In this document: one piece after another, positions 9,887-64,000 of the stretch | How positions within the stretch are numbered: the first letter of the stretch is position 1 | Layout of the letters: the number at the start of each line of letters is the position of its first letter | Source: Dendrobates tinctorius | Lineage: Eukaryota | DNA length: 64,000 nucleotides | Reading direction: 5' to 3' | Assembly: GCF_039654945.1 (NCBI RefSeq) | Contig: NW_027361725.1 | Span: 21,948,001-22,012,000 of the forward strand | Position numbers and translations under genes: made by a program | The notes under the pieces: generated by a model | Told to the model about the DNA's origin: nothing | Database searches by the model: none | What the model saw: the letters and a program-made list of their open reading frames with translations, nothing else

Positions 9887-11188
9887 CAGGGGCGGGACTA
9901 TCGCGGTTGCAGCGGTCACAGCTGTGACGGGGCCCGGAGTCCTCAGGGGCCCGATCGCGGAGCTGCAGCCGCTCATTGGCTGTGCAGCTCAGTTCTTTGA
10001 TTGGCTGCAACTGGCTGCTCTGTGCGCACAGGACCGGTGATGAGGTCACAGGAGGGGAGGAGTCATGGGGTTCACATGATCAGGGGCCTCTGTCTTAGGC
10101 CCTTGATCATGTGACCACCTGACTCTTCCCCTCCTGTGACTTCATCACACAGCCCACAGTGTATGCAGGACTGCTGTGCTGGTTGTCATGATGCACTGCT
10201 GGATGAGGGTAAGTTTATGTGTGGGGTGAGGGGTTTACAGGGTGGATGTAGCAGAGCTGTGTGTGTATGAGGTGTGGGGAGCCGTATGTGTATGAAGTGT
10301 ATGGATGTACAGAGAGGAGCCGTGTGTACCAAGTGTATGTAGTGCAGCCGTGTGTGTATGAGGTGTATGGAGCAGAGCCGTATGTGTACGAGGTGTACGG
10401 AGCTGAGACGTGAGTGTACGAGGTGAGCGGAGCTGTGTGTGTGCGAGGTGTATGGCGCAGAACCGTTTGTGCGAAGTGTAAGGAGCGGAGCCGTGAGTGT
10501 ATGAGGTGTACGGAGCGGAGCCGTGTGTGTGTACGAAGTGTATGTAGTGCAACCATGTGTGTATGAGGTGTATGGAGCGGAGCCGTGTGTGTACGAGGTG
10601 GACGGAGCAGAGCTGTGTGTACGAGGTGTATGGAGCGGAGCCGTGAGTGTACGAGGTGTACGGAGCGGAGCCGCGTGTGTGTACGAAGTGTATGTAGTGC
10701 AGCCATGTGTGTATGAGGTGTATGGAGCGGAGCCATGTGTGTACGAGGTGGACGGAGCTGAACCGTGTGTGTGCAAGGTGAGCGGAGCCGTGTGTGTATG
10801 AGGTGTATGGAGCAGAGCCGTGTGTGTGTGAAGTGTATGGAATGAAGCCATGTGTGTATGAGGTGTACGGACCGGAGCCGTGTGTGTACGGAGCGCAGCC
10901 GTGTGTGTACGAGGTGTACGGAGCGGAGCCGTGTGTGTGTATACGAGGTGTACGGAGAGCTGTGTGTATGGAGTGCAGCCGTGTATGTACGAGGTGTACC
11001 AAGCAGAGCCGTGTGTGTTCGAGGTGAGCTGAGTATATATGAGGTGTACAGAGCAGAGTCGCGCGTGTATGAGGGGTATGGAGCCGCACGTGTACGAGGT
11101 GTACGGAGCAGAGATGTGCATGTATTTTGGCATTGGGGCCCATTTGAAAGTTCGCACCGGGGCCCATAACTTTGTAGTTACGCTACTG
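9887..11188. mobile_element. Non-autonomous hAT element with an internal minisatellite
   Basis: CAGGGGCG...CGCTACTG termini; TSD GTACAAGG / GTACCAGG (7/8 match). Confidence 0.85.
10240..11120. repeat. ~30-32-bp minisatellite (GTGTACGAGGTGTA[C/T]GGAGCGGAGCCGTGT)
   Basis: Tandem units; they generate the spurious 310-323-aa HTAP/YTHGSAP ORFs. Confidence 0.92.
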
Positions 11189-12672
11189 GTACCAGGTGTT
11201 GAACTTCGACCGATCAGACATTGATGACATCCAAAAGATAGGTCATCAATGCTAAATGTTGTGAATTCACGTTCTGGCCTACCTCTGGTTACAAGTGAAG
11301 GTAGTGGAGCTGGTTATACTGACAGAGGGGTCGCGAGTTCTCTTTCCGGGCTCCCTCTGGTGGTTACAGGAGGTAATGGCGCTGATCTAATTAACAGAGG
11401 TCTGCCACCTGATAATGAGGAGGACGATTGGACATCTGGAGTTTCTGATTGGATTTAAGACAGCTGACTCCCTCTATCCTTGCTGGTGATTTTTTCCCGC
11501 CTCCTGAGGTCTTAGTTTCCAGCTCAGTCCCTGCAGGCTCAAGCTAAGTGTTTTTCTGTCTATTTCAGTTTTGTGTGGTCAGCCAGCCCCTGCTGGGGCT
11601 GTGCTGAATTTCCATCCTTATGTTACTGTTTGTGCCAGTTAGTTTTTGTCCCTTATTAGATTGGCCTCTCTTTGCTCTGTTTTCAGAATATACCAGAGAG
11701 CTGATATAGTGGGCGAAGGCTAGTGACTTCAGTGTTTTTTCTATCAGACGTGTTGGGCATTTTTTGCAGGGTTTTTTGCGTGACTGCAGACAGTAGCTTT
11801 CCTTTCCTTTCTAGTTAGTGTGGGCCCCATCATTTGCTCAGTCTATTTTTCTGCCTGCATTTGTGTTTTCATCTTGTCTCACCTACAATATATGTTTGGG
11901 GGTCATCTATTCCTTTGGGGTCTGCTCTGGGGCAGTTTAGATTTCCACTTTCTGGCTTTAGGCTTATTTATTTCTCCGGCTGTGTCGAGGCGTCTAGGAT
12001 CATCGTAGGCACGCTCCACGGCTACTGCTAGTTGTGTGGATAGGATCAGGTGTCTGCAATCTGCTTAGTTACTGTCATGTCGGACACTGTTCGCACCAGG
12101 GTGTCCGGCAGACAGTGGTAATACCCCATCCTACCACTTGATTCTCAGCGGCGCTGGTTGATCTTCTGATCCGGCTTGGATTGGGTTAACCAGGTTGTCA
12201 GTCTGGCTGAGGGCTTAGCCATGCCCTCTGTCTTTAAATTGTCCTGCGTGACTATGGGCGACGCCGACTATAGCTCTTGCCTTGTGCTAGCGATACCGGT
12301 CTGGAGTGGTGGTCTAAGGAGCATATGGTTTCTGGTGTAGTATATTCCGTTGTTGCCATTTTGCCTCCCTGTGTTGTATTTTTTGGTTGCCCTTGCACAT
12401 TATTGTATTCTCCTGTGTGTACGCGGTGTGGTGCATTTCCTTTATCCCTGTCCATACTTATTTGTGGGGTCTGGTGTTTGGTCTCCTCACTGGGTGGAGG
12501 GTGGTGGGTTCAGCTTAGGGCTGGACAGGAGACAAGGACAGGGTGGAGGCCCAAGCAGGCACACCTTCAGTGTAAACCCTGGGTTGAGGGACAACAGGGT
12601 CTCCCCTAGTCTGAGGGACACCGCAGGGGCCCCGGGGTTTCAGCCTAAAGTAACCTAGGCTTCCCATGACAT

Positions 12673-12682
12673 TATAGTCAGC
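12673..12682 (+). promoter_or_regulatory. Self-priming PBS of family A
   Basis: TATAGTCAGC is 9/10 complementary to GCCGACTATA (12263-72), 30 bp after a TTTAAA TATA-like box. Confidence 0.75.
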
Positions 12683-12710
12683 CCAAAAAAAAAAAAAAGG
12701 ATTATTTACC

Positions 12711-13570
12711 ATGGATCCTATAGTCTCCATAACCAAGCAGCTGGAGGCTCTGTCCATACAGGTCACTGAACTGAGGGGGGCGGTCCAGCAATAAGGCCTG
12801 TCAGTTCCTGCTGTATAAACAGAGGCAGCAGTCAGGGCAGCTGAACCCAAGTTACCTCTTCCTTAACGATTTTCTGGTGATCGCTGTAAGTTCGTTGTAT
12901 TTCGTGAATCCTGCAAATTGTATTTTCATATGCGTCCACTCTCCTCAGGAAATGAGGCTCAGCGTGTGGGCTTGGTAATTTCCTTGCTGAGTGGTGATCC
13001 ACAAGCATGGGCTTTTTCACTACCTTCTGATTCACCTGTATTTGAGTCCGTAGACTTTTTTTTTTTCTGCTCTTGGTTTAATCTATGACGATCCTGACAG
13101 ACTGGCGTTAGCAGAGTCTAAAATACGCTCTCTACTCCAGGGTGAGAGACTGGCGGAGGATTATTGTATGGAATTTCATCGCTGGACTGTGTACACTCAA
13201 TGGAATGACCCTGCACTAAGGAGTCAATTTTTGCATGGGGTTTCTGGAAGGGTTAAACAAGCTCTGCTAATGTATGAGACTCCCACCTCTCTGGAGGCTG
13301 CTATGGTGCTTGTAGTACGCATTGATCGCCGCTTTCGTCAGAGTTTGCAGGAGACATTGCCTGTGGGGGGGGGCAGTCTCTGGTGAGGTTACCTCAGGTG
13401 AATCCGTGGAACTTATGCAGATCACTGGTATATCACATACACATAATAACAAGCATAAATGTCCCTTGCCCAGAAAGCAAGGGGTCTGTTTTTTTTGTGG
13501 CAAAAAAGGACATTTTATTAATGCTTGCCCCCTGGTACCTAAGAAAGACGTGCCGGCAGAAAACTGCTAG
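12711..13570 (+). pseudogene. gag: gag of family A (PEG10/RTL1-like capsid plus CCHC knuckle), with stops and frameshifts
   Basis: EPKLPLP*RFSGDR...VISLLSGDPQAWAF; QWNDPALRSQF; CFFCGKKGHFINAC. Confidence 0.9.
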
Positions 13571-16500
13571 GCTTAGAGGGATTGGAGGAGTCTAGTCTGA
13601 GCCTTTGCATATCCTCCGTGGTGGTCTCCCAGTGTATGCTCCCTGCCAAGGTAGTAATCGGGGGCCAAGAGCTGTCAATTACTGTATTTGTAGATAGTGG
13701 TTCAGCCGCTAATCTCATTGATGAAAAGTTTGCGCGTACAGCGGGATTTAAGGTGGAGACGCTGCCTAATCCTATCCCGGTGGTTACCATCAATGCCTCC
13801 CCTCTCTCACAAGGGGAGATTAAAGAGTTTGTGGCTGATGTAAAACTCCACATTGGGGTCCTACAATCTGAGCGGGTAACATGTAAGGTGCTCAGTAATT
13901 TACCTGCTCATGTAGTTCTGGGGTTTCCATGGTTGTCTATGCACAATCCGATGATTGATTGGAAAACCCAGGACATAATCCAGTGGAGCAGATATTGCCA
14001 GGAGAGTTGTCTGGCCACATGTATCTCCGCTGTGACTCCCAGCATCCCGGAGCCACTGCTGGACTTTGCTGATGTATTTTCTGAAAGAGGTTGTTCAGAG
14101 CTGCCACCGCACCGACCCTATGACTGTGCTATTAGGTTGAATCCGGGGGCCAAGTTACCGAAAGCCAGGATGTTTAATATCTCAGGTCCTGAGAGGCAAG
14201 CTCTCAAAGAATACATTGCAGAAAGTCTAAGCAAAGGGCACATCAGGCCTTCATCATCTCCATTGGCGGCGGGGTTCTTCTTTGTCAAGAAGAAAGATGG
14301 CGGATTACGCCTGTGTCTGGATTTCAGGGAACTCAACCAGATTACGGTTCGTGACCCACACCCGATGCCACTGATACCCGATTTGTTCAACCAGGTTTTC
14401 CAAGCTTGACCTCAGGGGGGCGTACAATCTCATAAGAGTCCGTCAAGGGGATGAATGGAAGACGGCATTTAATACCCCTGAGGGTCATTTTGAGAATTTG
14501 GTGATGCCATTTGGGTTGACGAGCACGCCAGCAGTATTTCAACATTTCATAAATGATATCTTTTCTCATCTCTTGGGGAAATTTGTTATTATATACCTTG
14601 AAGACATTCTTATTTACTCACGTGACCGTGATGCACACATAGAGCATGTTAGGCAGGTATTGCCAAGCTTGAGAAATGTGTATTTGTCGTGCAAGAATTA
14701 CCTTTTTTGGGTTATGTAATTTCTGCCTCAGGGTTTAAAATGGACACCGCTAAGGTGCAAGCGGTGCTGCAGTGGGATCGGCCTGATAATCTCAAGGCGC
14801 TTCAGCGATTCCTGGGCTTTTCCAACTATTATAGGAAATTTATTTAGAATTTTTCTATGATTGCTAAACCGCTCACCGACATGACTAAAAAAGGTACCAA
14901 TTTTTCTGACTGGTCTGAGGCTGCTGTGCGCACGTTTGAATTCCTAAAAAACAGTTTTGATTCAGCTCCCATCCTGGTTCAGCCTGATGTCTCTCTACCA
15001 TTTACCATGGAGGTGGATGCATCTGAGGTTGGAGTGGGGGCAGTACTGTCTCAGGGTCCATCCTTGGGTAAATTGCATCCGTGTGCCTACTTCTCCAAGA
15101 AGCTGTTGTCTGCCGAGCGTAATTACGATATTGGTAACAGGGAATTGTTGGCCATCAAGTTGGCATTTGAGGAATGGCGACACTTCTTGGAGGGGGATGT
15201 CCATCAGATTACTGTTATAACAGACCATAAAAATCTGCTTTATTTAGAGTCTGCTAAACACCTGTCCCCCAGACAGGCTCGCTGGGCGTTATTCTTCACC
15301 CGGTTCAATTTTTTTGTGACATACTGACCAGGTTCTAAGAATACTAAGGCGGACGCCTTGTCCAGATGTTTTCCGGGTGGAGAGCCACGTGAGGATCCGG
15401 TGCCTATCCTCCAAAAGGGAGTTGTGATCTCGGCTCTCACGACAGAAGTTGAGGCAGAGATTGCAGAGGCTCAGGAGGAGGTACCGCCGGATCTGCCTCC
15501 TAATAAATCATTTGTGCCACTACACCTATGCTTAAAGGTGTTAGGGGAACATCACGATACTGTCCTGGCGGGCCACCCAGGGGTTAAGGCACTCTGGAAC
15601 TTGTATCACTTCATTTTTGGTGGCCCAAAATCCGGCAGGACGTGGCCTCATATGTGTCAGCCTGTACCACGTGCGCACGGGCAAAGACACCATGCTCCCG
15701 TCCTGCTGGCACGTTGCATCCTCTCTGTGTGCCCAGTAAGCCATGGACTGAGATTTCCATGGATTTCATTACGGATTTGCCCTCCTCGGCTAGTAACACG
15801 GTCATTCTGGTAATAGTTGATCGGTTCTCTAAAATGTTGCATTTCGTTGCTTTGCCATCTTTGCCCAATGCGAAGACCCTTGCTCAGGTATTTATTTGCG
15901 AGGTGGTCAGACTTCATGGTGTCCCGTCTGACATTGTATCTGATAGAGGTACACAATTTGTGGCAAAATTTTGGAGAGCTTTTTGTTCACGCCTAGGGAT
16001 TAAATTGTCTCTTTCATCGGCTTTCCATCCGCAGTCGAATGGGCAGACTGAGCGTATGAACCAAAACCTGGAACAATACTTACGCTGTTTTGTTTCTGAC
16101 AATCAGGAAGAGTGGTCGGCGTTTCTTCCTCTGGCTGAATTCGCGATAAACAATCATTGTCAGGAATCGTCTGGGGAATCTCCTTTCTTTTGTGTTTATG
16201 GTCAACATCCCCAATTCTGTATCTTGCACCAAGGGTGCTCTGCGGGCGTCCCTGAGGAGGACCAGTTGGGAGCACAATTGTCATCCGTTTGGAGGAGAGT
16301 AAAGCAGCGCTTGCTGAATGTAGGTTCTAGGTACAAACGTGTGGCTGACGGTAGACGTGTGCCAGGTCCGGACCTGTGTGTGGGTGATTGGGTGTGGTTG
16401 TCTACAAGGAACATCAAACTCAAAATACCATCGCTTAAGTTGGGTCCCAGGTTCATTAGTCCGTTTAGGATCTCTGCAATTATCAACCCTGTGGCATTTC

Positions 16501-16900
16501 GTTTGGAGTTACCTGCCCTATACAAGATACATAATGTGTTTCACAAAGCGTTACTTAAGAAAGTCGTGGGTGCTGTTGATGCTTCTCCCATTCCACCACC
16601 TCCCGTCTTGGTGGATGGCACGTTGGAGTTTGAGGTGTCCAAGGTGGTTGACTCTCGGGTAGTGCGTCGCACTCTACAGTACCTGGTCCACTGGCGTGGC
16701 TATGGTCCTGAGGAGAGGACTTGGGTGCTGGCTTCGGGGCTTCGGACATACATGCGGACCGACTGATAACAGGGTTTCATCGCCACCATCCGGACAAGCC
16801 GGGTCCTCGACATTGTGAGGTTCCTGGGGTCTCTCGTAGAAGGCGGGGTACTGTCATGTCGGACACTGTTCGCACCAGGGTGTCCGGCAGACAGCGGTAA
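13558..16900 (+). pseudogene. pol: pol of family A: PR-RT-RNaseH-IN-chromodomain, disrupted
   Basis: FVDSGS protease; LPPHRPYDCAI, FFVKKKDG, MPFGL and YLEDILI (decayed YLDD) RT; [26 protein letters not shown] RNase H; ISMDFITDLP, SDRGTQF, HPQSNGQTER integrase; FEVSKVVDSR...QYLVHWRGYGPEERTW chromodomain. Confidence 0.95.
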
Positions 16901-19248
16901 TACCCCATCCTACCACTTGGTTTTCAGCGGCGCTGGTTGGTCTTCTGATCCAGCTTGGATTGGGTTAACCAGGTTGTCAGTCTGGCTGAGGGCTTAGCCA
17001 TGCCCTCTGTCTTTAAATTGTCCTGCGTGACTATGGGCGTCGCCGACTATAGCTCTTGCCTTGTGCTAGCGATACCGGTCTGGAGTGGTGGTCTAAGGAG
17101 CATACGGTTTCTGGTGTAGTATATTCCGTTGTTGCCATTTTGCCTCCCTGTGTTGTATTTTTTGGTTGCCCTTGCACATTATTGTATTCTCCTATGTGTA
17201 CGCGGTGTGGTGCGTTTCCTTTATCCCTGTCCATACTTATTTGTGGGGTCTGGTGTTTGGTCTCCTCACTGGGTGGAGGGTGGTGGGTTCAGCTTAGGGC
17301 TGGACAGGAGACAAGGACAGGGTGGAGGCCCAGGCAGGCACACCTTCAGTGTAAACCCTGGGTTGAGGGACAGACAGGGTCTCCCCTAGTCTGAGGGACA
17401 CCGCAGGGGCCCCGGGGTTTCAGCCTAAAGTTACCTAGGCTTCCCATGACAGTTACCAACCTCTCTGGTTTTCTGTGGCTTAGCTTGGTCTTGCTTTCCT
17501 CCTCGGTGACCCAATCATAACAGCTAAAGTAGTGGACAACCTCTTTAATTACAGCAAATGATATCACAAAAGAGTCACCAAAGTCAGAGCCCTACCAAAC
17601 TCGACACTTACGGCAAGTCCTAGCAATCCTTGTCTAGCACAATGAGTAGATAAATAAAAAAAACTCTGCGACTGAGGATCAATAGGGGTCCTAACGCTAA
17701 CCCCATGGTTAAAAAAAAAAAAATCACATCCCCTCTAATAAAATATAAAATTTCTATAAAATGTACAATATCACTATCATTGACTAGCATCTGTCAATTA
17801 ACCATTAATGGGCTGAGGATTTTTGTTTTTATAAATATGTTTATTTAAATATTTAACATTAAAAAAAACACCTCTCAAAATTGTATGTACAGAATGTTTT
17901 CCAGTTTTACACTGCTCCCATCAATGCCACCTCATCATTAACTTGTTAAAAGTTCTTTCTTTCCCAAGAAAATGAAAAAGAAAGCGCAGCTGCGTAATGT
18001 CTGTGCTTTCTGCTGGAACCTGCGTTGCCTGCGCAGTAAAAAAAAATACATTTCCAGGGAAAACAAAGAAACAATTTGATTGGTTTGAGTTGAGAGTGTG
18101 GGATATCAAGGAGTGATCAGGCATACATGGCTTTTTTTTTCTCTATCATCTATTTTTTTCTTCAGTCAAAACAATGAAGCTGAGTATTTTCTGTGCTCTT
18201 GGGAGATTTACATACAATTTATATCAGCAATGGCAGGGTAGGGAGAACAAAAGTAAAAAAAAATAAATAAATTACAGATTTCCGAGGATGCTAAGCACCT
18301 CATTGGTAAGTCTTCCTATGCATCTACTGACAGCTGATGGCTAGATTAAACAAAGAGACCAGTAACTTGGGCTATTAGCTTCAAGCAATCATGTCCCATT
18401 ATTGCAATTATGTGGGTAAATGCATAAAATCACGTTATGTATCTCACATCCCTGTTGGAGAAATCTTTTCGTTTCTGGGGTTCCTGCCTGCGGTAATGTG
18501 CAAATATTTATACAGTTTTTTTTCATATGTTCCCTACTAACACGCACATTTGTATCAGCACATTTGTAATCATTGCCGAAGAATCACCTAAATTGCATTA
18601 AGGGGTTATTCCTGGAATCAAATTAAAAACAAGAAAAATTAGGAAGATACATTAAAATGACATTTCTCGAGTGTAGGCAGGGCGCAGTGCCATACCACAA
18701 CTATCTATTTGCTCTTCCTGTACAACCCTATTAATTTTTTTAAATTGATATTTATTTGGACTCCTCATTGTGAAGGGGGCCACCAGAAACAATAGGTGAA
18801 CTCTACTGACCCTAAAAACATCCCTTTGAAAACGATAACATGGCTCTTGCATCACGGAACACGTTCACCCTGGTGATCTAGTGGTGGTGTCGGAAGAGAC
18901 GTGGAGGATGGCCTAATAAAAATCTTTTCCCAATTTAAAGGAGCGGGTCTCCTATGGTTGTAATGCCCATACACTAAGTGTATGGGCTGCCAAACATTTC
19001 CCCCTGGGGGGTACACATCAACATACCATGTAACAATTTTTTGTACGGCCATCATAAACACCCTTGAAAAAAATAACGTGGCTGTTGCATCACGGATCAT
19101 GGTCACCATGGTCATCTAGTGGTGATGGCTGATGAGGATGAGGAGAAGGAGGAGGATAACAGCAAATAGGCAAAATCAGGAAGCATTTAGCCATGTGTGA
19201 GTGTAAAGCGGTGCATGGGAATATACCTCCAAAAAAATACATTTGAGG

Positions 19249-22309: not shown

Positions 22310-25046
22310 GGAAGATCTTTAAGTCCTCTTTTTGCTGCTTAGTGATAGTATTTGTATATTCAGCAGAAATTGTGGGACAAATTCTGGTGCCAATTTTACC
22401 CACTTCTTGTGTGAAAATGTTAAATCTGGGGCTAAAACAAAATTTTTATGGTAAAATGTAATTATTTTTTCTCCACTGCCCAATGGTATAAAATTCTGTG
22501 ACATACCATTGGTATCAATATGATCACTGCACCCTTAGAATAATTCATTGAGAGGTGTAGTTTGTAAAATGGGGTAACTTATCGGGCGTTCTACTGTCCT
22601 GGCACCTCAGGGGCTCTGCCAGTGGGTCATGGCACCCTCAAACCATAATAGTAAAATATGCAGTATAATATGGCACTCCTTCCCTTTTGAGCTTTGCACT
22701 GTACCTCAAAAGTTGTTTTTACCCACACATGGGTTATTGTCAAACTCAGGAGAAATTACACAACAAATTCTGGGGTCCATTTTCTCCTGTTACCCTTGAG
22801 AAAATAAAAAATTTGGGGCAAAAATACAATTTTGCAGGAAAAATATATTTTTTTAATTTTCTTTGCTCTGTTATAAACTTCTGTAAAGAACCTGGTGGTT
22901 CAACATGCACACAACACATATAGGTAAGTTCCTTGAGGGGTCTAGTTTCCAAAATGGTATCAATTGGGGGGGATTTCCACTGTTTAGGCACATCAGGGGC
23001 CCTCCAAAAGTGACATGGCATCCGTTCTTGATTCCAGCCAATTTTGTGTTCAAAAAGTCAAACCTTTCTCTTTCGGTTCCTGACGTGCACTGAAGCAGTG
23101 GTCTTCCTGTACACATGGGGTATTGACGTACTCAGGAGAAATTGAACAACAAATTTTGTGGTCCATTTTCTCCTGCTACCTTTGTTAAAATGAAAAAAAA
23201 AAAATTGGTGCTAAAAGATGATTTGGGGGAAAAAAAATTGATTTTTAATTTTCACGGCTCTACGTTATTAACTTATGTGAAGCATCTGGGGCTTCAATGC
23301 GCTCACTAAACATCTAGATAAGTCCCTTGAGCAGTCTAGTTTCCAAAATGGGGTCACTTGTGGGGGGTTTCCACTGTTTAGGCATACCAGGGGTTCTCCA
23401 AACATGACATGGCATCCGTTATCGATTCTAGCCAATTTTGCGTTCAAAACATGAAACGGTGCTCCTTCCCTTCTGAGCCCTGCCATGCGCCCAAACAGTG
23501 GTCTTTCTCCACACATGGGGTATTGGCGTACTCAGGAGAAATTTCTCAACAAATATTGTAGCTCATTTTCTTTTGATACCCTTGAGAAAATAAAAACAAA
23601 TTGTGTCCAAAGTAAAATTTTTGTGAAAAAAGTTAAATGTTAATTTTTTCCTTCCACATTGATTCAATTCTTGTGAAGCATCTGAAGGGTTAATAAACTT
23701 CTTGCATGTGGTTTTGAACACCTTGAGGGGTGCAGTTTTTAGAATGGTGTCACTTTTGGGTATTTTCTGTCATAGGCCCCTCAAAGTCACTTCAATTGTA
23801 ATATGGTCCCAAAAAAAATATGGCTTTGTGAGTTTTGTTTGAAAAGTGAGAAATCGCTGGTCAATTTGTTAGGGTTAGCGGATTGCACTGAATAAAATTA
23901 ATAAGAAAGTGCAATCGCAACCCGGGGTCCACCGTGCAGAGATGTTTTCCTGCTGCTAGTGTGAACAAATGACGGATAAGAAACTCGCGAATGCACTGCG
24001 TTAAAACCACACAGAGCAAACGGGAAGCAGAGTACCAAGCTCAGCTAACTACCGAGCGGCACTAAAAATATAAGAACCCTACTCAGCTAACCACCAAGCG
24101 GCAATGAAAAAATAAGAAATCTACAATACCCTGTAGAACCCACAGGGAGTAAGCATGCGGGTTGAGCTTGCCCCGCAACTGACCCGTGCTAACCGCACAC
24201 GTGTCCGAGACAGGTGCTAAGTCAAGCGAAAAGGCAAAATCTACACTACCTATCTGAAGCTGACCAGGGCTAACCACACAAAAGCATACAGAGAGGGCGT
24301 TAGAGTATCCACCCACACACACCACAATACCAATGACGCTAGCACACCTGCGTGCGCTGCTGGGCTCCACCCCAAACAAGCCCAGTTGGAAACGTCACCT
24401 GTGGGCCAATCCAGAGCCACATCACCAGAGCAGTAAGTGCCCAAGCACAAATGAGAAGATGCCACATCACGGACATGCTCAGTAAGATGATTTAGACTCC
24501 AGAGGGTAGGTCTGCCTCTGTAGACCACTGGTTACCATAGACTTAGCTGTAGAGGCAGCAGTAATTACATGGACACTACGAAGTAGTGCAAGATTCTGGG
24601 ACTGACGTCTGTACTGAGCAGCAATCCCAGTGGCTGGGTCTGAATGGGAGACTGCAGAGGCAGACAAGACCCATGCAACGGAAGAATCTTGGCACTTAAC
24701 GCAACTTTTAACCTTTAGAACTTCCTTATAAAAAAAAATTATGTTTCAAAAACTGATGTAAAGTAGACATGTGGTTTATGTTATTTATTAACTATTTTGT
24801 GTGACTGATAGGTATAAAAATTAAACGTTTAAAAATTGTGAAATTTTCTAAAATTTTTATCAAATTTACAAATTTTGAAGACATTTTACCACTATCATAA
24901 AGTACAATATGTCACGAAAAAACAATCTCAGAATAACCGGCATCTGTTGAAGCATTCCAGAGTTATAACCACATAAAGTGATAGTGGTCAGATTTCAAAA
25001 TTAAGGCCTGGTCATTAACCTACAAAGTGGCTTCATCCTTAAGGGG
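22310..25046 (-). mobile_element. Truncated non-autonomous piggyBac-type element with ~380-bp internal repeats
   Basis: Ends ...AAGGGG|TTAA (25047-50); reverse-complement homolog of 30960-33780; interrupted by a solo LTR. Confidence 0.75.
23867..24701 (-). mobile_element. Solo LTR (family C)
   Basis: TGTTAGG...CTTAACG; TSD CAATT / CAACT; host sequence rejoins; homologous to 43986-45411. Orientation inferred. Confidence 0.82.
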
Positions 25047-30535: not shown

Positions 30536-31559
30536 CGCTAGACTGTGTGTACATACACATGGGCCATGTACACAGCAAACAAGTCGGTAGGACAGTGTTC
30601 TCACCACCAAGAGACTGAAATACAGAGGAACAGTATAACAAACGTGAAATATACTCTGCTGTAAAAAATATCTAACAATAAACAGCAAGTGCTAGTAAAA
30701 AGATGATAACAAAACAGGATATTTAGTTGATACGTTTTTTGCCAAAAATGTATGCTAAGCCGCTCTACCAAATGTCAAGGTATACCCAACAGCACCTATA
30801 TGAGCAGGATTCAGAAAGGTAATGTCTGATGTGGACATGCTGTGTAAGATGGCTTTATATGTGCATGGCCCACAAGAGAGGGGTTGAGACCTCCCAAAAA
30901 ATTGCAAAATCAAGAAACAAATTGAATACAAACGCACGGGCCATGCACACAGCAATTAACCCCTTCACTACCAAGGGTGGTTTGCACGTTAACTACCGGG
31001 CCAATTTTTACAATTCTGACCACTGTACCTTTATGAGGTCATAACTCTGGAACGCTTTCATGGATCCCGGTGGTTCTGACATTGTTTTCTTGTGACATAT
31101 TGTACTTCATGTTAGTGGTAAAATTGCATTCAAATAACTTGCGTTTATTTGTGAAAAAAACAGAAATTTGGCGAAAATTTTGAAAATTTCGCAATTTTCC
31201 AACTTTGAATTTTTATGCCCTTAAATCACAGCGATACGGCACACAAAAAACTTAATACATAACATTTCCCACATGTTTACTTTACATCAGCACAATTTTG
31301 GAACCAACATTTTTTTTTGTTAGGAAGTTATAAGGGTTAAAAATTGACCAGCGATTTCTCATTTTTGCAACACCATTTAATTTTTAGGGACCACTTCACA
31401 TTTGAAGCCACTTTGAGGGGTCTATATGATAGAAAATACCCAAAAGTGACACCATTCTAAAAACTGCATCCCTTAAGGTGCTTAAAACCACATTCAAGAA
31501 GTTTATTAACCCTTTAGGTGCGTCACAGGAATTTTTTGAATATTAAAAAAAAATGAACA

Positions 31560-33750
31560 TTTAACTTTTTTTCACAAAAAAAATACTTCAGGTTCAATTT
31601 TCTTTATTTTACCAAGGGTAACAGGAGAAATTGGACAGCAAAAGTTATTGTGCAATTTGTCCTGAGTACGCTGATACCTGATATGTGGGGGGGAACCACT
31701 GTTTCGGCGCATGGCAGAGCTCAGAATGGAAGGAGCGCCGTTTGACTTTTTCAATGCAAAATTGGCTGGAATTCAGATCGGACGCCATGTCACGTTTGGT
31801 GAGCCCCTGATGTACCTAAACAGTGGAAACCCCCCAAGTGACCCTATTTTGGAAACTAGACCCCCCAAGGAACTTATCTAGATATGTGGTGAGAACTTTG
31901 AACCCACAAGGGCTTCACAGAAGTTTATAACGTACAGCGGTACAATTAAAAAATCATATTTTTTCCACAAAAATGATCTTTTCACCCCCAATTTTTATTT
32001 TTCCAAGGGTAACAGGACCCTAAAAGTTATTGTGCAATTTGTCCTGAGTACGCTGATACCCCATATGTGGGTGTAAATGACTATTTGGGCGCATAGCAGA
32101 GCTTGGAAGGGAAGCAGTGCCATTTGACGTTTTTGGCTAGAATTGAGATCGGACACCATGTCGCGATTGGAAAACCCCTGATGTACCAAAACAGTGGAAA
32201 CCCCCCACAAATAATACCATTTTGGAATCTAGACCCCCCAAGGAACTTATCTAGATGTGTGGTGAGAACTTTGAACCCCCAAGGGCTTCACAGAAGTTTA
32301 TAACGTACAGCAGTACAATTAAAAAATCATATTTTTTCCACAAAAATGATCTTTTCACCCTCAATTCTCATTTTTCCAAAAGTAACAGGACCCTAAAAGA
32401 TATTGTGCAATTTATCCTGAGTACGCTGATACCCCACATGTGGGTGTAAACCACTATTTGGGCGTATGGCAGAGCTCGGAAGGGAAGCAGCGCCATTTGA
32501 CGTTTTTGGCTGGAATTGAGATCGGACACCATGTCGCGTTAGGAAAGCCCCTGATGTACCAAAACAGTAGAAACCCCCCACAAATGACACCATTTTGGAA
32601 ACTAGACCCCCCAAGGAACTTATCTAGATGTGTGGTGAGCACTTTGAACCCCCCAGTGCTTCACTGAAGTTTATAACGTCCGGGCGTGAAAATAAAAAAA
32701 TCGTATTTTTTCCACAAACATGATCTTTTAGTCCCCATTTTTTATTTTCCCAAGGGTAACAGGAGAAATTGGACCCCAAAAGTTGTTGTCCAATTTGTCC
32801 TGAGTACGCTGATACCTCATATGTGGGAGAAAACTACTGTATGGGCACACGTCGGGGCTCGGAAGGGAAGTAGTGACGTTTTGGAATGCAGACTTTGATG
32901 GAATGGTCTGCGGGTGTCATGTTGCGTTTGGAGAGCCCCTGATGTACCTAAACAGTGGAAAACCCCCACAAGTGACCCCATTTTGGAAACTAGACCCCCT
33001 AATGAACTTATCTAGATGTGTGGTGAGCACTTTGAACCCCCCAGTGCTTCACAGAAGTTTATAACGACCGGGCGTGAAAATAAAAATATCGTATTTTTTC
33101 AACAAACATCATCTTTTAGTCCCCATTTTTTTTATTTTCCCAAGGGTAACAGGAGAAATTGGACCCCAAAAGTTGTTGTCCAATTTGTCCTGAGTACGCT
33201 GATACCTCATATGTGGGAGAAAACTACTGTATGGGCACACGTCGGGGCTCGGAAGGGAAGTAGTGACGTTTTGGAATGCAGACTTTGATGGATTGGTATG
33301 CGGGTGTCATGTGCGTTTGGAGAGCCCCTGATGTACCTAAACTATTGAAACTCCCCACAAGTGACCCCATTTTGGAAACTAGACCCCCCACGGAGCTTAT
33401 CTAGATGTGTGGAGAGCACTTTGAACCCCCAAGTGCTTCACAGAAGTTTATAACGCCTGGGCGTGAAAATAAAAAAAACATTTTTTTCCGCAAAATTATA
33501 TTTTTGCCCCCAATTTTTTATTTTCCTAAGGGTAACAGGAGAAATTGGACCCCAAAAGTTGTTTTGTAATTTGTCCTGAGTAGGCTGATACCCTACATGT
33601 GGGGGTAAAACACTGTTTGGGCACATGGCAGAGCTTGGAAGGGAAGGAGCACCATTTGACTTTTTCAACGCAGAATTGGCTGGAATTGAGATCAGATGCC
33701 ATGTTGCCTTTGGAGAGCACCTGATGTGCCCAAACAGTGGAAACCCCCAA
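31560..33750. repeat. ~375-390-bp tandem repeat, about 6 copies
   Basis: AACAGGA...AATTTGTCCTGAGTACGCTGATACC...TTTTGGAAACTAGACCCC recurs near 31620, 32011, 32384, 32758, 33148 and 33534. Confidence 0.9.
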
Positions 33751-33785: not shown

Positions 33786-33968
33786 NNNNNNNNNNNNNNN
33801 NNNNNNNNNNNNNNNNNNNNNNNNNNNNNNNNNNNNNNNNNNNNNNNNNNNNNNNNNNNNNNNNNNNNNNNNNNNNNNNNNNNNNNNNNNNNNNNNNNNN
33901 NNNNNNNNNNNNNNNNNNNNNNNNNNNNNNNNNNNNNNNNNNNNNNNNNNNNNNNNNNNNNNNNNNNN
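33786..33968. other. Assembly gap (N run)
   Basis: Run of N. Confidence 1.
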
Positions 33969-57824: not shown

Positions 57825-58887
57825 CAGCTCTGGCAAAAATTAAGAGACCACTGCAAAATGTTTGAGTAAAATGTTAATTGCACTTTTATTCTATAAACTA
57901 CTGTCAACATGTCTTCGAATTTCCAAGCATTAAATTTTGTATTTATTTTCAGAAAATGAGAAATGGTCAAAATAACAAAAAAGTAGTGCTGGCAGACCTT
58001 AAATAATGCTAAGAAATCAAATTCATAATCATTTAGAAACAACAATACTAATGTTTTAACTCAAGAAGAGTTCAGAAATCAATATTTTGTGGAATAACCA
58101 TGATTTTTAATCACAGCTTTCATGCATCTTGGCATGCTTTCCAACAGTTTTTCACACTGCTTTTGGGTGACCTTATGCCACTCCTGGTACAAAAACTTAA
58201 GCAGTTCTTCTTTGTTTGATGGCTTGTGACTATTAATCTTCCTCTTGATTACATTCCAGAGGATTTCAATGGGGGTTCTAGTCTGGTGTTTGATCTGGCC
58301 ATGACAGGGATTTAATGTGATGGACCGGTCCTTCATCCACACATTGACTGACCTAGCTGTGTGGCATGGCGCATTCTCCTGCTGGTAAAAACGGTCCTCA
58401 GAGTTGGGGGAAATTCCCTGATCAGAAGGAATCAACTGTTTTTCCAGGGTAACCTTGTATGTGGCTTGACTCATACGTCCATCGCAAAGATTAACCTGCC
58501 CAATTCCTGCCTTGCTGAAGCATCCCCCAGATCATCACCAATCGTCCACCAAATTTCATAGTGGGTGCAAGACACTGTGGCTTGTATGCCTCTCCAGGTC
58601 TCCGTCTAACCATTAGAAGACCAGGTGTTGGGCAAAGCTGAAAATTAGACTCATCAGAGAAGATTACCTTACTCCAGTCCTCTATGGTCCAATCCTTATG
58701 GTCTTTGGCAAACTTCAGCCTGGCTCTCCTTTGCTTCTCATTGATGAAAGGCTTTTTTCTACCATTACATGACTTGAGCCCTGCCTCTAAGAGCCTGTTA
58801 CAAACTGTTCTTGCCATGCACTTCACCCCAGCTGCCATTTGCCATTCCATTTGTAGATCACTTGATGTCATTCTGCGGTCACTGAGT
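57825..58887 (-). mobile_element. Tc1-like transposon (3' TIR plus frameshifted transposase), interrupted by Gypsy family B
   Basis: TA|CAGCTCTGGCAAAAATTAAGAGACC TIR; RKKPFI...RLKFAKDHKDWT..WSKVIFSDESNF; FYQQENAPCHTA; PIEILWNVIKR. Confidence 0.93.
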
Positions 58888-59812
58888 TGTTGTGAATTTG
58901 CTTTCTGGCCTCCCTCTGGTTATTACTGAAGGTAGTGGAGTTGGTCTGATTGACAGAGGGGTTGCGAGTTCTCTTTCTGGGCTCCCTCTGGTGGTTACTG
59001 GAGGTAATGGAGCTGATCTGATTGACAGAGGCTTGCCACCTGATAATGAGGATGACAATTGGAGATCTGGGGTTTCAGATTGGGATTTAAGACAGCCGAC
59101 TCCCTCTATCCCTGCTGGTGATTTTCTCCCTTTTCCACCTGAGGTCTGATGTCTCCAGCTCTGTCCCTGCATGTTCAGCTAAGTGGACCATTTGCTATTC
59201 TGTTTGCATTTGATCTGGTTTTGTCTATCTCAGTTTTGTGCTGGTCAGCCAGCTCCGGCTGGGGCTGTGCTGAATCACCGCCCATATGTTACTGCTTGTG
59301 CCAGTTTGTTTTGTCCCTTGTTAGATTGGTCTCCTTTTGCTCTGCTTTCAGAATATACCAGAGTGCTGATATAGTAGGGGGCGAAGTCGTGCGACTTCAG
59401 TGTTTTTGTGCATCAGACGTGTTGGACTTTTTGCAGGGTTTTTTGCATGATTGCAGACAGTGTCTTTCCTTTCCTGTTCTGTCTAGTCAGTGTGGGCCCC
59501 ATCATTTGCTCAGTCTATTTTCCTGCCTGCATTTGTGTTTTCATCTTGTCTCACTGACAATATACTGTATGTTTGGGGGCTATCTATTCCTTTTGGGGTC
59601 TGCTCTGGGGCAGTTTAGTTTCTTGCTTTAGGCTCAGTTAGCTCTCCGGCTGTGATGAGGCGTCTAGCTAGGATCATCGTAGGTACGCTCCAGGGCTACT
59701 GCTAGTTGTGTGGATAGGATCAGGGGTCTGCAATCTGCTTAATGACCAACCTCTCTGGTTTTCTGTGGCTTAGCCTGGGCCTGCTCTCCTCCTCGGTGAC
59801 CCAATCATAAAA

Positions 59813-59823
59813 GAATCACCAGC
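59813..59823 (+). promoter_or_regulatory. Self-priming PBS of family B
   Basis: AATCACCAGC is perfectly complementary to GCTGGTGATT (59114-23), 29 bp after an ATTTAA TATA-like box. Confidence 0.8.
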
Positions 59824-62222
59824 CTAACTGTAGACTCTAGGGTACTCTAAAGAAGGAAAGAATTTTTTTTTAAAAAAAGAAAAAGTGTCAGAATTTTTTT
59901 ATATATTTTTTCCTCTTTTTTTTCTGGCTGCAGGAGATTTTTTTTCATTCTCTAAATGGAGACTAAGCAATTGTCTGATCGTGTTGAGCAGCTCGCTGCT
60001 GAAGTGCGGGGAATTTCTGCCTATCTCACTCAATCATCTGCTGTTGAACCAAAAATCCCTACTCCTGATGTGTTTTCTGGGGATCAGTCTAAATTTTTGA
60101 ATTTTAAGAATAATTGTTAACTATTTTTTGCTTTGAAACCTAACTCATCGGGGAGTTCTGTCCAGCAGGTTAACATTGTCATTTCCCTGCTGCACGGCGA
60201 TCCCCAGGATTGGGCCTTTTCTTTGACACCCGGAGATCCTATTCTGGCTAATGTGGATGTGTTTTTTCAAGCCTTGGGGTTGTTGTATGATGAACCTAAT
60301 GCTATTGATCAAGCTGAGAAAACCTTATTGGCATTGAACCAGGGTCAGGATTCTGCAGAGTTATATTGTCAAAAATTCCGAAAGTGGGCGGTCCTTACTA
60401 AATGGAATGACGATGCCCTAGCAGCTCTCTTTTGGAAGGGTTTGGCAGAAACCGTAAAAGATGTTATGGTGGGATATCCTGTTCCCTCTGGTCTAGACCA
60501 TTGGCCATTCAAATTGATCGGAGTTTACAGGAACGTAAAACTACGTGAGAGGTGTTGCCGCCTTTCGAATGAACGTCTGAACCCATGCAATGCGATAGGG
60601 TTTTGTCTAGGGCGCAACGTCAGGAGTTTAGAAGGCGTAATAAGCTGTGTTTTTTCTGTGGGGATGCCTCTCATACTATTTCTGTCTGCCCTAAAAGAGA
60701 ATAGCGTTTTGCTCACACATTTGCGGTGGGCAGTGTACAGCCTAAGTTCCTTTTGGCAATTACCCTGATCTGCTCCTTGTCCACATTTTCCGCTAAGGCA
60801 TTTGTAGATTCAGGAGCAGCTTTGAATCTGATGGACTTGGACTTTGCTAAACGTTGTGGTTTTCCCATGATACCCCTGCGGACTTCTATCCCTTTGAGGG
60901 GTATTGATGCTACTCCTTTGGCGGAGAATAAACCCCAGTTTTGGACCCAGGTGATAATGCGGATCGCCCCGGACCACCAAGAAAATTGTAAATTTTTGGT
61001 GTTGCACAATTTGCATGATACTATTGTTCTGGGTTTTCCTTGGTTGCAAACTCATAATCCTGTTTTGGATTGGAAATCTGTGTCTGTGGTGAATTGGGGT
61101 TGTCAATGTGTTCTTAGTGACACTCATGTTTTCTCCACCTCTTCCCTGTCTCATGATATTCCTGACTATTTGGCTGATTTTTCTAATGTATTTAGTGAGA
61201 GTAAGTCTGTGTCTTTGCCACCTCATAGGAGTTATGACTGTGCAATTGAGTTAATGCCTGGGTGTAAATTTCCCAAGGGTCGGCTTTTCAACTTATCGGT
61301 ACCCGAACATGATGCTATGTGATCTTATATCAAGAAGTCGTTGGAGAAGGGTCATATTAGACCATCCTCTTCACCTTTAGGTGCTGGGTTTTTTTGTGGC
61401 CAAGAAAGATGGTTCATTAAGGCCTTGTATTGACTATCGTTCCCTTAACAAAATCACTGTTAAATATCAGTACCCGTTACCCCTGATTTCTGATTTATTT
61501 TCCAGAGTTAAAAGTGCCTGTTGATTTACCAAGCTTGACCTCAGGGGGCGTATAATCTTATTCGCATCAAGCACGGGGATGAATGGAAGACGGCGTTTAA
61601 TACTCCGGAGGGACATTTTGAGTAACTGGTCATAACTTTTGGGCTCACTAATGCCTCTTCTGTCTTCCAATCTTTTATGAATTATATTTTCCGGGACTTT
61701 GTGGATAAGTTTTTGATCATTTATCTGGATGATATTTTGATCTTTTCCAGTGATTGGGATTCTCATGTGGAACATGTCCGGACTGTGTTCCGGATTTTGA
61801 GGGAAAATTTTCTGTATGTTAAGGGATCGAAGTGCTTCTTTGATGTACAGAGGATTTCATTTTTGGGATTCATTTTGTCCCCGTCTGCTATTGAAATGGA
61901 CCCGGCCAAGATACAGGCCATTTATGATTGGGCTCAGCCCACTTCTTTGAAGGCTCTCCAGAAGTTTTTGAGTTTTGCTAATTTCTACCATAAATTTATA
62001 AGTAATTTTTCTGGTATTGTTAAACCACTGACTGATTTGACCAAAAAGGGCACTGATGTGGTGAATTGGTCTTCAGAGGCAGTCTCGGCATCTCAGGAGC
62101 TGAAGCGGAGATTCACTTCTGCTCCGGTTCTACGGCAACTTGATGTCTCATTCCCATTTCAGGTGGAGGTAGATGCTTCTGAGATTGGTGCAGGAGCCGT
62201 TTTGTCCCAAAAAGATCCAGTG

Positions 62223-62597
62223 TAGGGATGGGCGAATCCTGAATTACTCGGAATCGCTAGACTGTAACGAGTCCGAGTCGGAAACTCGCTATTCGTTGCA
62301 AGTCTAGCGAGTCCAATGTTAATGAATGGGGAATGGCAATCCTAGTTTTTTCAGAGTTTAATACAAGCAATCCTAGTTTCTTAGCGATTTTGTGTCCCCT
62401 TCAGCAGGGGGACACAAAATCGCTAAGAAACTAGGATTGCTTGTATTAAACTCTGAAAAAACTAGGATTGCCATTGATTTGTATTGGACTCGTTACTGTG
62501 CGAATAATCGCTTGGAAACTCGCAGAGTACCGACTCCTGCGAGTCCCCTACTACTCGCAGAGTAACGATTCTTAACGAGTAGATTCACCCATCCCTA
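62223..62597. mobile_element. hAT MITE in the family B RNase H region, with a perfect internal hairpin
   Basis: TAGGGATGGGCGAATC / GATTCACCCATCCCTA; perfect TSD ATCCAGTG. Confidence 0.95.
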
Positions 62598-64000
62598 ATC
62601 CAGTGACTTCTAAGATGAATCCCTGTGCCTTCTTTTCTCGAAAATTCTCCCCATCTGAACGTAACTATGACGTGGGGAATCAGGAATTGTTGGCCATGAA
62701 ATGGGCATTTGAAGAGTGGAGACATTGGTTGGAGGGAGCTAGACATCAAGTTGTGGTCCTCACCGACCACAAGAATTTGATTTATCTTGAATCAGCCAAA
62801 CGCTTGAATCCTAGACAGGCTAGGTGGGCCTTGTTTTTCACGCGTTTTAATTTTGTGGTCTCTTTTCTTCCAGGCACTAAGAATGATAAGGCTGACGCCC
62901 TTTCTAGGAGTTTCTTTGCGGATTCTCTTGATGTGACCGAGCCTACTACCATTCTAAATGAGGGTGTAGTTCTTTCCACCATCTCACCCGATTTGAGACG
63001 TGCCCTGGAGGAATTTCAGGAGGATAAACCTGAACCTTGCCCTATGGGAAAATTGTATGTCCCTGACCAGTGGAGGAAAAGAGTAATGTCTGAAATTCAT
63101 TGCTCCGCGTTGGCTGGTCATCCAGGTATTTTTGGTACCAGAGATTTGGTGAGTCGGTCTTTTTGGTGGCCTGCTTTATCTCGTGATGTCAGGAATTTTG
63201 TGCAGTCCTGTGGGACTTGTTCTCGGTCCAAGCCCTGTTCTTATTCTAGTGGGTTGTTGATGCCGCTGCCGGTGCCCAGGAGGCCATGGACCCATATCTC
63301 AAAGGATTTTTTTTCCGATCTTCCTGTCTCTCAGAGAATAACTGTTATCTGGGTGATTTGTGATAGATTTTCTAAGATGGTCCATCTTGTACCACTCCCA
63401 AAGTTGCCATCTTCTTCTGAGTTGGTGCCCTTGTTTTTACAACAGGTGGTTCGGTTGCACGGGATTCCTGCCCTTGTTTTTACAACAGGTGGTTTGGTTG
63501 CACGGGATTCTTGAGAACATTGTGTCGGACAGAGGAGTCCAGTTTGTTTCCAGATTTTGGAGAGCTTTTTGTTCCAAACTGGGAATTCAGTTATCTTTCT
63601 CCTCTGCATTTCATCCTCAGATCAATGGGCAGACTGAGAGAACAAACCAGACTTTGGAGTCCTATTTGAGATGTTTCATATCAGCTGATCAGATGACTGG
63701 GTCTCATTTTTGCCCTTGGCCGAATTCGCGCTAAACAATAGAGCTAGTTCTGCCACTTTGATGTCGCCCTTTTTCTGTAACTTTGGGTTCATCCTCAATT
63801 TTCTTCAGGGCAGGTGGAATCTTCAGCCTGCCCAGGTGTGGACACTGCAGTAGAGAGAATGCAGTAGATTTGTGACCAAGTGGTGGATAAGTTGTCCCAC
63901 TCTCAGGAAAAAGCACAGCGGTTTTTCAACCGGCATAGGACCATTGGTCCCCGGTTTAAAGTGGGTGATATGGTTTGGTTGTCTTCAAAGACTATTCCTA

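What the first reader, a model, noticed from the sequence alone, without database searches (positions are those of the whole stretch)
58888..59149. Codon-constrained reading frame inside the U3 of LTR family B: a candidate C-terminal extension of Pol
Seen: the two family B LTRs (11257 and 58888) keep the same open frame from the first LTR base (VVN..SGLPLV..EGSG.G..DRGVASSLSGLPLVVTGGNGADLI.RGLPPDNE.D.W.SGVSDW), with an internal 24-aa repeat. By manual count over ~65 codons, 10 differing codons are synonymous and 11 non-synonymous; in the central ~33 codons the ratio is 7:1. In family A the post-chromodomain pol frame (HADRLI..FH..HPDKPG) reads through the PPT as G-T-V into the 3' LTR for only ~16 codons, and the family B frame has the same phase (xxT-GTT-GTG). 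Inference: family B Pol carries an ~85-aa LTR-encoded tail under selection, overlapping the promoter. The antisense frame sharing third positions has a stop in the 11257 copy. I do not know of this being described.
Basis: partly seen in the sequence, partly recalled or inferred. Interest (0 to 1): 0.72.

Follow-up and report, generated by a model that had tools for sequence, protein, structure and literature searches.

The report
Pol reading frame runs into U3
A frog retrotransposon seems to have no stop codon at the end of its pol gene, so translation would run on into the promoter part (U3) of its own long terminal repeat; this is known in plant relatives, and the extra tail is only weakly constrained as a protein.

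Summary
The sequence facts hold. Both family B LTRs (58888 and 11257) are open in the same frame from LTR base 2. They differ at 25 of 196 bases: 10 synonymous and 11 non-synonymous codons, 7:1 in the centre. A 72-nt (24-codon) tandem duplication is present.

Overall the synonymous excess is not significant (P=0.09). A scan over all sub-windows gives P about 0.02, and only in this frame.

The 3' end of the family B element lies beyond the window. I therefore used a related family in Ranitomeya imitator (75% Pol identity, same LTR start).
- There, pol has no stop before the polypurine tract.
- With the usual 8-G tract it enters the LTR in exactly the proposed phase.
- Tails run 17 to 55 codons, most ending at or just after the TATA box.
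- The tails evolve almost neutrally (dN/dS about 0.5-0.7, against 0.13 for the adjacent chromodomain).
- They nevertheless lack frameshifting indels (2 seen, about 12 expected).

The 85-aa length belongs to one copy only. The other copy stops after 66 codons, at a TAA inside the TATA-like box.

LTR-encoded integrase ends are already described in plant chromoviruses (CRM, Bingo). Five first-reader notes record the same idea elsewhere in this genome. Verdict: real, partly supported, a new member of a known kind.

The parts
58888..59812 (+). Family B LTR, copy 1: the 5' LTR of a degraded Ty3/gypsy element that runs off the window. Starts TGTTGTG; its end reads CATAAAA where copy 2 has CATAACA.
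   Evidence: Self-BLAST against 11257-12067 at 83% identity. The match continues at 17457-17522. Terminal inverted repeat read directly.
58889..59149 (+). Open frame of the finding in copy 1: 86 codons plus a stop. Codons 1-65 (58889-59083) align gap-free with copy 2. The rest follows a 1-nt length difference at 59082-59084.
58881..59024 (+). 72-nt tandem duplication (two units, 81% identical), which gives the 24-aa repeat. Unit 2 starts with a PPT-like AGAGGGG followed by a look-alike of the LTR start.
   Evidence: The alignment to the related family places their single unit on unit 2.
59085..59091 (+). TATA-like ATTTAAG. Its TAA (59088-59090) is the in-frame stop in copy 2, and is out of frame in copy 1.
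   Evidence: It lies 28 nt upstream of the inferred transcript start.
59114..59123 (+). Inferred start of R: 10 nt complementary to the primer-binding site at 59814-59823. This sets U3 at 58888-59113.
   Evidence: The same pairing, with different letters, lies 29-30 nt after the TATA box in three related subfamilies.
59814..59823 (+). Primer-binding site just after the 5' LTR, complementary to 59114-59123 (Tf1-type self-priming).
59956..64000 (+). Degraded gag-pol of the family B element: gag-like, protease, RT, RNase H, and integrase zinc finger and core. It has several frameshifts, and the integrase C-terminus and 3' LTR are not in the window.
   Evidence: ORFs. Pfam RT_RNaseH and Integrase_H2C2. 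Three-frame reading.
11257..12072 (+). Family B LTR copy 2, first part. It is a solo LTR with target duplication GCTAAA (11251-11256 and 17523-17528), split by a family A element.
11258..11458 (+). The same frame in copy 2: 66 codons, then TAA inside the TATA-like box.
17457..17522 (+). Family B LTR copy 2, last part, ending CATAACA.
12073..17451 (+). Family A chromovirus nested in LTR B. LTRs are 12073-12674 and 16852-17451 (97.9% identical). Target duplication GTTAC.
   Evidence: Pfam rve, SH3_Tf2-1 and Chromo.
16721..16900 (+). Family A post-chromodomain pol frame. It runs through the PPT (16838-16848, then TAC) and 15 codons into the 3' LTR, in the same phase as the family B frame.

Best explanation
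The open frame is the last stretch of the pol reading frame. In this clade of amphibian, self-priming (Tf1/sushi-type) chromoviruses, pol has no stop codon between the chromodomain and the polypurine tract. Ribosomes on the genomic RNA therefore read through the tract (..GGG-GGT-ACT) and on into the 3' copy of U3, in the frame xxT-GTT-GTG. They stop at the first in-frame stop.

In family B that stop is the TAA of the TATA-like box, 66 codons in. The same DNA thus serves as promoter in the 5' LTR and as coding sequence in the 3' LTR.

The tail is a fast-changing extension of integrase. Its frame is kept (no stops, no frameshifts), but its residues are only weakly constrained. In family B a central stretch and the acidic, Trp-containing end may be under some protein-level selection.

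Shown:
- the frame, its phase and the lack of a pre-PPT stop in the related family and in family A;
- the substitution and indel statistics;
- the positions of the TATA box and the transcript start.

Inferred:
- that family B pol joins its U3 in this phase;
- that the tail is actually translated;
- any function of the tail.
For: **Phase and absence of a stop**
- The related R. imitator element R1 reads ...PPQGGG-T-VVNS... and 39 codons into its 3' LTR.
- Ten gene models read GGG-TVVNS through the PPT, and one whose PPT is deleted still reads VVNS.
- Among 3' junctions fetched without regard to the tail, 5 of 9 have the 8-G tract and are in phase. The other four have G runs of 7, 10, 10 or 13.
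- Only one copy has a stop before the PPT (CAA changed to TAA).
- Family A in the window has the same phase.

**Open frame**
- This frame has no stop before the TATA region in B, Ra and Rb.
- Over the same stretches the other two phases hold 4 to 12 stops; (2/3)^n is 0.008 for B2 and 0.03-0.09 for Rb.

**Frame maintenance**
- Substitution divergence in the tail equals that of the rest of the LTR.
- Non-homopolymer frameshifting indels: 2 seen against 11.8 expected (Poisson P about 6e-4). Both lie in the last 7 codons.
- The other indels are in frame: 15, 48 and 72 nt.

**Family B**
- dN/dS is 0.31 overall. The local scan gives corrected P=0.017-0.019 in this frame only.

**U3 boundary**
- The PBS pairs with LTR positions 227 (B), 135 (Ra), 182 (Rb) and 184 (Rb''). 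Each is 28-30 nt after the TATA box, with compensating changes.
Against: - The 3' junction of family B is not in the window and could not be fetched, so the phase for B rests on homology.
- The tails are not conserved as proteins. Rb has dN/dS about 0.6-0.7 with variable sites at codon positions 17/18/19. The adjacent pol C-terminus in these elements has dN/dS 0.13 and 25/17/73. Pooled synonymous count is 24 against 20.4 expected, P=0.21.
- Tail length varies from 15 to 66 codons. Rd stops after 17 codons in two copies, and Rc stops 42 nt before its TATA box.
- The copy with the longest intact pol ORF (R2, 1014 aa) has 10 G and stops at the TGA of TGTTGTGA.
- The tail has no relatives: word search, exhaustive search, Pfam and Atlas all found nothing.
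- Several of the fetched copies were chosen through gene models that read into the tail. That favours open frames.
Confidence: 0.6

Rival explanations
1. The U3-encoded tail is a selected, functional protein module of integrase, for example a second tether next to the chromodomain. Purifying selection would act on its residues while the same DNA works as promoter.
For: - Local synonymous excess in family B: 7:1 over 33 codons, corrected P about 0.02, in this frame only.
- Frame maintenance in all related subfamilies.
- The acidic, Trp-containing end and the stop position (W-I-stop) are shared by B and Rc.
- One Rb pair shows a synonymous excess, P=0.019.
- Precedent: the CR motif of plant CRM elements is LTR-encoded (PMC3059260).
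Against: - dN/dS is 0.5-0.7 with an even spread over codon positions in the related tails. The neighbouring chromodomain has 0.13.
- Tail sequences differ between subfamilies, and the tail is cut to 15-17 codons in A and Rd.
- No domain or relative was found.
- Only two family B copies were available.
Confidence: 0.25
2. Family B pol ends at or before the LTR edge, for example in the frame xTG-TTG-TGA as in copy R2. The U3 frame would then be a chance open frame, made longer by duplication of a stop-free 72-nt unit.
For: - The overall test on the two copies is not significant, P=0.09.
- Duplicating a stop-free unit doubles an open frame at no cost.
- Indels of 24, 48 and 72 nt could reflect a repeat period rather than coding.
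- R2 and three other junctions are out of phase.
Against: - The modal 8-G junction is in phase, and no copy but one has an earlier stop.
- The same frame is open in independently diverged U3 sequences, while the other frames carry 4-12 stops.
- There is a deficit of 1-2-nt indels.
- The local codon signal is seen in this frame only.
Confidence: 0.12
3. The pattern reflects DNA-level constraint on U3, such as factor-binding sites and their spacing to the TATA box, or the integrase-binding LTR end. It would not reflect translation.
For: - The first 5-6 codons are invariant in all families. This fits the LTR-end att site.
- The last codons overlap the conserved TATA region.
- A deficit of indels could come from spacing constraints.
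Against: - The substitution rate in the tail equals that of the rest of the LTR, so the bases themselves are not conserved.
- U3 length differs freely between subfamilies (134, 181 and 226 nt), always by in-frame steps.
- The third-position pattern in family B has no DNA-level reason.
Confidence: 0.05

Closest known systems
Plant centromeric retrotransposons, CRM clade group A (Neumann et al. 2011, PMC3059260)
   Same: [quoted passage not shown]
   Different: In CRM the LTR encodes the CR motif, a fairly conserved putative targeting domain that takes the place of the chromodomain. Here the chromodomain lies upstream of the PPT. The LTR-encoded part is an extra, poorly conserved tail without a recognisable domain.
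Beta vulgaris chromoviruses Bingo1-4 and Bingo7 (Weber et al. 2013, PMC3605345)
   Same: The chromodomain lies upstream of the PPT and the gag-pol ORF extends into the flanking 3' LTR. Sister families (Bingo5, Bingo6) stop before the LTR. This matches the variable tail lengths seen here.
   Different: These are plant elements. No analysis of frame maintenance or of overlap with the TATA box was reported in the passages I read.
Tf1/sushi group of chromoviruses (fungi and vertebrates), self-priming
   Same: Pol ends in a chromodomain (seen in family A and the R family; family B's Pol end is outside the window). The PBS pairs with the 5' end of the element's own transcript (group described in bioRxiv 10.1101/2022.12.06.519325).
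   Different: I found no statement that Tf1 or sushi Pol runs into U3. Whether that is described for vertebrate members I could not check.
Yeast Ty1 (POL ends inside the 3' LTR) and retroviral genes that overlap U3 (MMTV sag, HIV nef). These come from my own knowledge and were not checked here.
   Same: LTR U3 sequence that is also protein-coding.
   Different: Ty1 belongs to a different superfamily (copia). sag and nef are separate accessory genes, not a run-on of pol.

Membership tests
Ty3/gypsy chromovirus, Tf1/sushi group | Pol domains in the order PR-RT-RNase H-IN | tested here: met
   Family B: ORFs in that order; Pfam RT_RNaseH 8e-24 and Integrase_H2C2 1.4e-19. Family A: rve, SH3_Tf2-1.
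Ty3/gypsy chromovirus, Tf1/sushi group | Chromodomain at the integrase C-terminus | not testable with these tools
   The C-terminus of family B Pol lies beyond base 64000. It is met in family A (Pfam Chromo 1.6e-9) and in the related R. imitator family.
Ty3/gypsy chromovirus, Tf1/sushi group | Self-priming: the PBS is complementary to the first bases of the transcript | tested here: met
   59814-59823 pairs with 59114-59123. The same arrangement with compensating changes is seen in Ra, Rb and Rb''. RNA ends were not measured.
Ty3/gypsy chromovirus, Tf1/sushi group | LTRs TG...CA with a short target-site duplication | tested here: met
   The solo LTR B is flanked by GCTAAA. Family A is flanked by GTTAC.
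Chromoviruses with an LTR-encoded end of Pol (CRM group A / Bingo type) | No stop between the integrase C-terminus and the PPT; the ORF passes the PPT into the 3' LTR | tested here: inconclusive
   Met in the related family and in family A of the window. The 3' junction of family B itself is outside the window and could not be fetched.
Chromoviruses with an LTR-encoded end of Pol (CRM group A / Bingo type) | The LTR-encoded part is conserved as a protein motif (as the CR motif is) | tested here: inconclusive
   Family B shows a local signal, P about 0.02. Related tails have dN/dS 0.5-0.7 with no position bias. No relatives were found.

The most novel reading that the evidence does not exclude
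In the family B lineage, U3 would be a true dual-use sequence. The duplicated central repeat and the acidic, Trp-containing end would form a selected integrase module, for example a second chromatin or host-factor tether after the chromodomain. It would be written in promoter DNA, with its stop codon built into the TATA box. Coding and promoter constraints would then shape the same 200 bases.
Probability: 0.2. Interest if true: 0.6.

Novelty: new member of a known kind. Interest (0 to 1): 0.38.

Why it matters
**For annotation.** Pol models of these very abundant frog elements should not be ended at the PPT. U3 of these LTRs should not be treated as purely non-coding. The R. imitator gene models show how such tails get spliced into chimeric host 'genes'.

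**For biology.** This is an animal example of promoter DNA that is also read as protein. Its signature is unusual: the frame is kept while the residues drift. If the family B tail proves functional, it would be a candidate for an integration-targeting or regulatory add-on to a chromodomain integrase.

Tried and rejected
**Searches for relatives of the 66-aa tail**
- Word-based protein search: nothing.
- Exhaustive search of 1.84 billion representatives: four weak hits, all unrelated repeat proteins.
- Pfam: nothing.
- ESM Atlas: best score 0.80, and recognition in the range of shuffled sequences.

**Attempts to fetch more family B copies**
- An exact 20-mer from the LTR gave one hit each in viral contigs and in metagenome contigs. 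Both were chance matches with no other similarity.
- Reads of four runs laid on 58700-61300 show that the family is extremely abundant in two coded organisms and present in two more. Contigs are about 150 nt and only the 40 best-supported differences were listed. No per-site periodicity test and no 3' junction could be obtained.
- The findings search by sequence was blank.

**Other attempts**
- AlphaFold2 on the chromodomain plus tail, with a 10-row alignment, gave mean pLDDT 37. Even the chromodomain was not modelled, so the result says nothing about disorder.
- I did not build any consensus or ancestral sequence. All tests are pairwise on natural copies.
- I considered the in-frame sizes of the large indels (24, 48, 72 nt) as evidence and then down-weighted them, because a 24-nt repeat period would give the same result.

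Full report
**Anatomy of the window**

Self-comparison shows two LTR families.

Family B has two copies, 83% alike over about 810-850 nt.
- Copy 1 (58888-59812) is the 5' LTR of a degraded Ty3/gypsy element. Its gag, protease, RT, RNase H and integrase follow up to base 64000. The integrase C-terminus and the 3' LTR are outside the window.
- Copy 2 is a solo LTR (11257-12072 plus 17457-17522), flanked by the duplication GCTAAA.
- Copy 2 is split by a family A chromovirus (12073-17451, LTRs 97.9% alike, duplication GTTAC).
- Copy 1 sits inside a Tc1/mariner transposase remnant.

**Check of the observation**

From LTR base 2, 65 codons align without a gap and are open in both copies.
- The copies differ at 25 of 196 bases, at codon positions 1/2/3 = 4/8/13.
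- That is 10 synonymous and 11 non-synonymous codons, with NG86 dN/dS 0.31.
- The other frames give 4:16, 6:15, 3:18 and 2:19. The antisense frame that shares third positions gives 9:11 and has a stop in copy 2.
- The 24-aa repeat is a 72-nt tandem duplication.

Statistics on the two copies:
- Placing the same 25 changes at random gives 10 or more synonymous codons in 9% of trials. The overall excess is therefore not significant.
- The central 7:1 run is rarer. A fixed 33-codon window gives P=0.0013.
- After correction for all window positions and widths, P=0.017-0.019 in this frame. The two other sense frames give 0.72 and 0.35.

Copy 2 stops after 66 codons at a TAA inside ATTTAAG. Copy 1 has GGG where copy 2 has GG (59082-59084), so it runs on to 59149. 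The 85 aa are therefore a feature of one copy.

**Family A**

The post-chromodomain frame (16721-16900) passes the PPT as G-T-V and continues 15 codons into the 3' LTR. In this copy a frameshift near 16720-16766 separates that frame from the chromodomain ORF.

**Related elements from elsewhere**

The family B RNase H-integrase ORF finds mostly fish elements at about 50% identity. One frog relative stands out at 75%, a gene model of Ranitomeya imitator.

Its locus L002 holds two young elements of a related family, which I call R (LTR pairs 99.6% and 99.1% alike). Their LTRs start with the same TGTTGTGAATTC.
- In R1 the pol ORF reads ...PPQGGG-T-VVNS... and goes 39 codons into the 3' LTR. This is the phase proposed for family B.
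- R2 has 10 G instead of 8 in the PPT. It stops at the TGA of TGTTGTGA.

A search with the chromodomain end of R2 gave many R. imitator gene models.
- Ten of these models read GGG-TVVNS through the PPT.
- One model whose PPT is deleted still reads VVNS.
- One diverges after TV.

I fetched ten more loci.
- Six were chosen through models that read into the tail. This favours open frames.
- Four were chosen through models that splice out before the PPT, and so do not.
- Among junctions not chosen for the tail, 5 of 9 carry the 8-G tract and are in phase. The others have G runs of 7, 10, 10 or 13.
- Only one copy has a stop before the PPT.

**Tail lengths and the U3 boundary**

In the pol phase the frame is open for:

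| Family | Codons open | Where the stop lies |
|---|---|---|
| A | 15 | inside the LTR (its TATA box not located) |
| Rd | 17 (two copies) | before the TATA box |
| Rc | 37 | 42 nt before the TATA box |
| Ra | 39 | just after the TATA box |
| Rb | 47-55 | in or just after the TATA box |
| B | 66 | in the TATA-like box |

The other two phases carry 4 to 12 stops over the same stretches.

The primer-binding site after the 5' LTR is complementary to a stretch 28-30 nt downstream of the TATA box. This holds in B, Ra, Rb and Rb'', with different letters each time. It supports Tf1-type self-priming. It places the transcript start at LTR position 227 in B (59114), 135 in Ra and 182-184 in Rb. In these four families the frame therefore covers roughly 90% of U3, whatever its length.

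**Selection**

The last 123 codons of pol before the PPT serve as a positive control. In nine of these R elements they give dN/dS 0.05-0.33 (mean about 0.13), with changes at codon positions 25/17/73.

The tails behave differently:
- Rb has dN/dS about 0.6-0.7 (ratio of means), with changes at 17/18/19.
- Ra and Rc have about 0.5.
- Pooled over five pairs, there are 24 synonymous codons against 20.4 expected, P=0.21.
- One of five R pairs reaches P=0.019 in the scan.

Substitution divergence in the tail equals that of the rest of the LTR. Frameshifting indels outside homopolymer runs are nevertheless rare. The density in the rest of the LTR predicts 11.8, and 2 are seen, both in the last seven codons (Poisson P about 6e-4). 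Larger differences are in frame (15, 48, 72 nt). A 24-nt repeat period could explain some of these.

The pattern is a frame that is kept open while most residues drift. The possible exception is the central part of the family B tail.

**Comparison with what is known**

- Plant CRM group A elements are described with a coding region that extends into the 3' LTR and encodes the CR motif (PMC3059260).
- Beta vulgaris Bingo1-4 and Bingo7 have the chromodomain upstream of the PPT and an ORF that extends into the LTR, while Bingo5 and Bingo6 stop before it (PMC3605345).
- The Tf1/sushi group, to which these frog elements belong by chromodomain and self-priming, is described in bioRxiv 10.1101/2022.12.06.519325.

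The kind is therefore known. The frog case, with its near-complete overlap of U3 and its stop in the TATA box, is a new member.

Five first-reader notes record the same idea on other pieces of this genome (s1-382895, s1-377174, s1-381563, s1-377232, s1-364603). I could not read those stretches.

**Limits**

- The family B 3' junction was not seen.
- Only two family B copies were available.
- Part of the R sample was chosen through open tails.
- Lengths of G runs in assemblies are error-prone.
- The N run at 33786-33968 was left alone.

Noticed in passing
window 59814-59823 and 59114-59123; L010, L011, L005, L008, L012, L003: The primer-binding site after the 5' LTR pairs with a stretch 28-30 nt downstream of the TATA box. 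The letters differ in B, Ra, Rb and Rb'' but the pairing is kept. This is covariation in favour of Tf1-type self-priming.
   Followed up: partly
window 11251-17528: Clean nesting. A solo LTR B with duplication GCTAAA is split by a 5.4-kb family A chromovirus with its own duplication GTTAC.
   Followed up: yes
window 58491-58871 (-): A Tc1/mariner-type transposase remnant (126-aa ORF). The family B element inserted into it.
   Followed up: no
window 58953-58965: The second unit of the 72-nt U3 duplication begins with a PPT-like AGAGGGG, followed by a look-alike of the LTR start. The duplication may have arisen at the PPT-LTR junction during plus-strand priming.
   Followed up: no
L002 21555-21575, L006 near 32544 (-), L013 near 12690, L005 near 39565 (-): The length of the G run in the PPT varies (7, 8, 10, 13) between copies of the R family. 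This decides whether pol enters U3 in phase. It may be real instability or assembly error.
   Followed up: partly
L002 999-1108: Element R1 carries a 110-nt exact repeat of its LTR start directly after the 5' LTR, and it lacks gag.
   Followed up: no
R. imitator gene models P0126-P0236: Many annotated 'genes' of this assembly are chimeras. A chromovirus pol fragment is spliced to host exons, often at a GT within the codons GGS-GEG just before the PPT.
   Followed up: no
window 7746-8535, 10186-11170, 31381-33749 and 22536-23816: Tandem arrays: a 31-nt period array, a minisatellite next to the solo LTR, and a satellite of about 375 nt present in both orientations.
   Followed up: no
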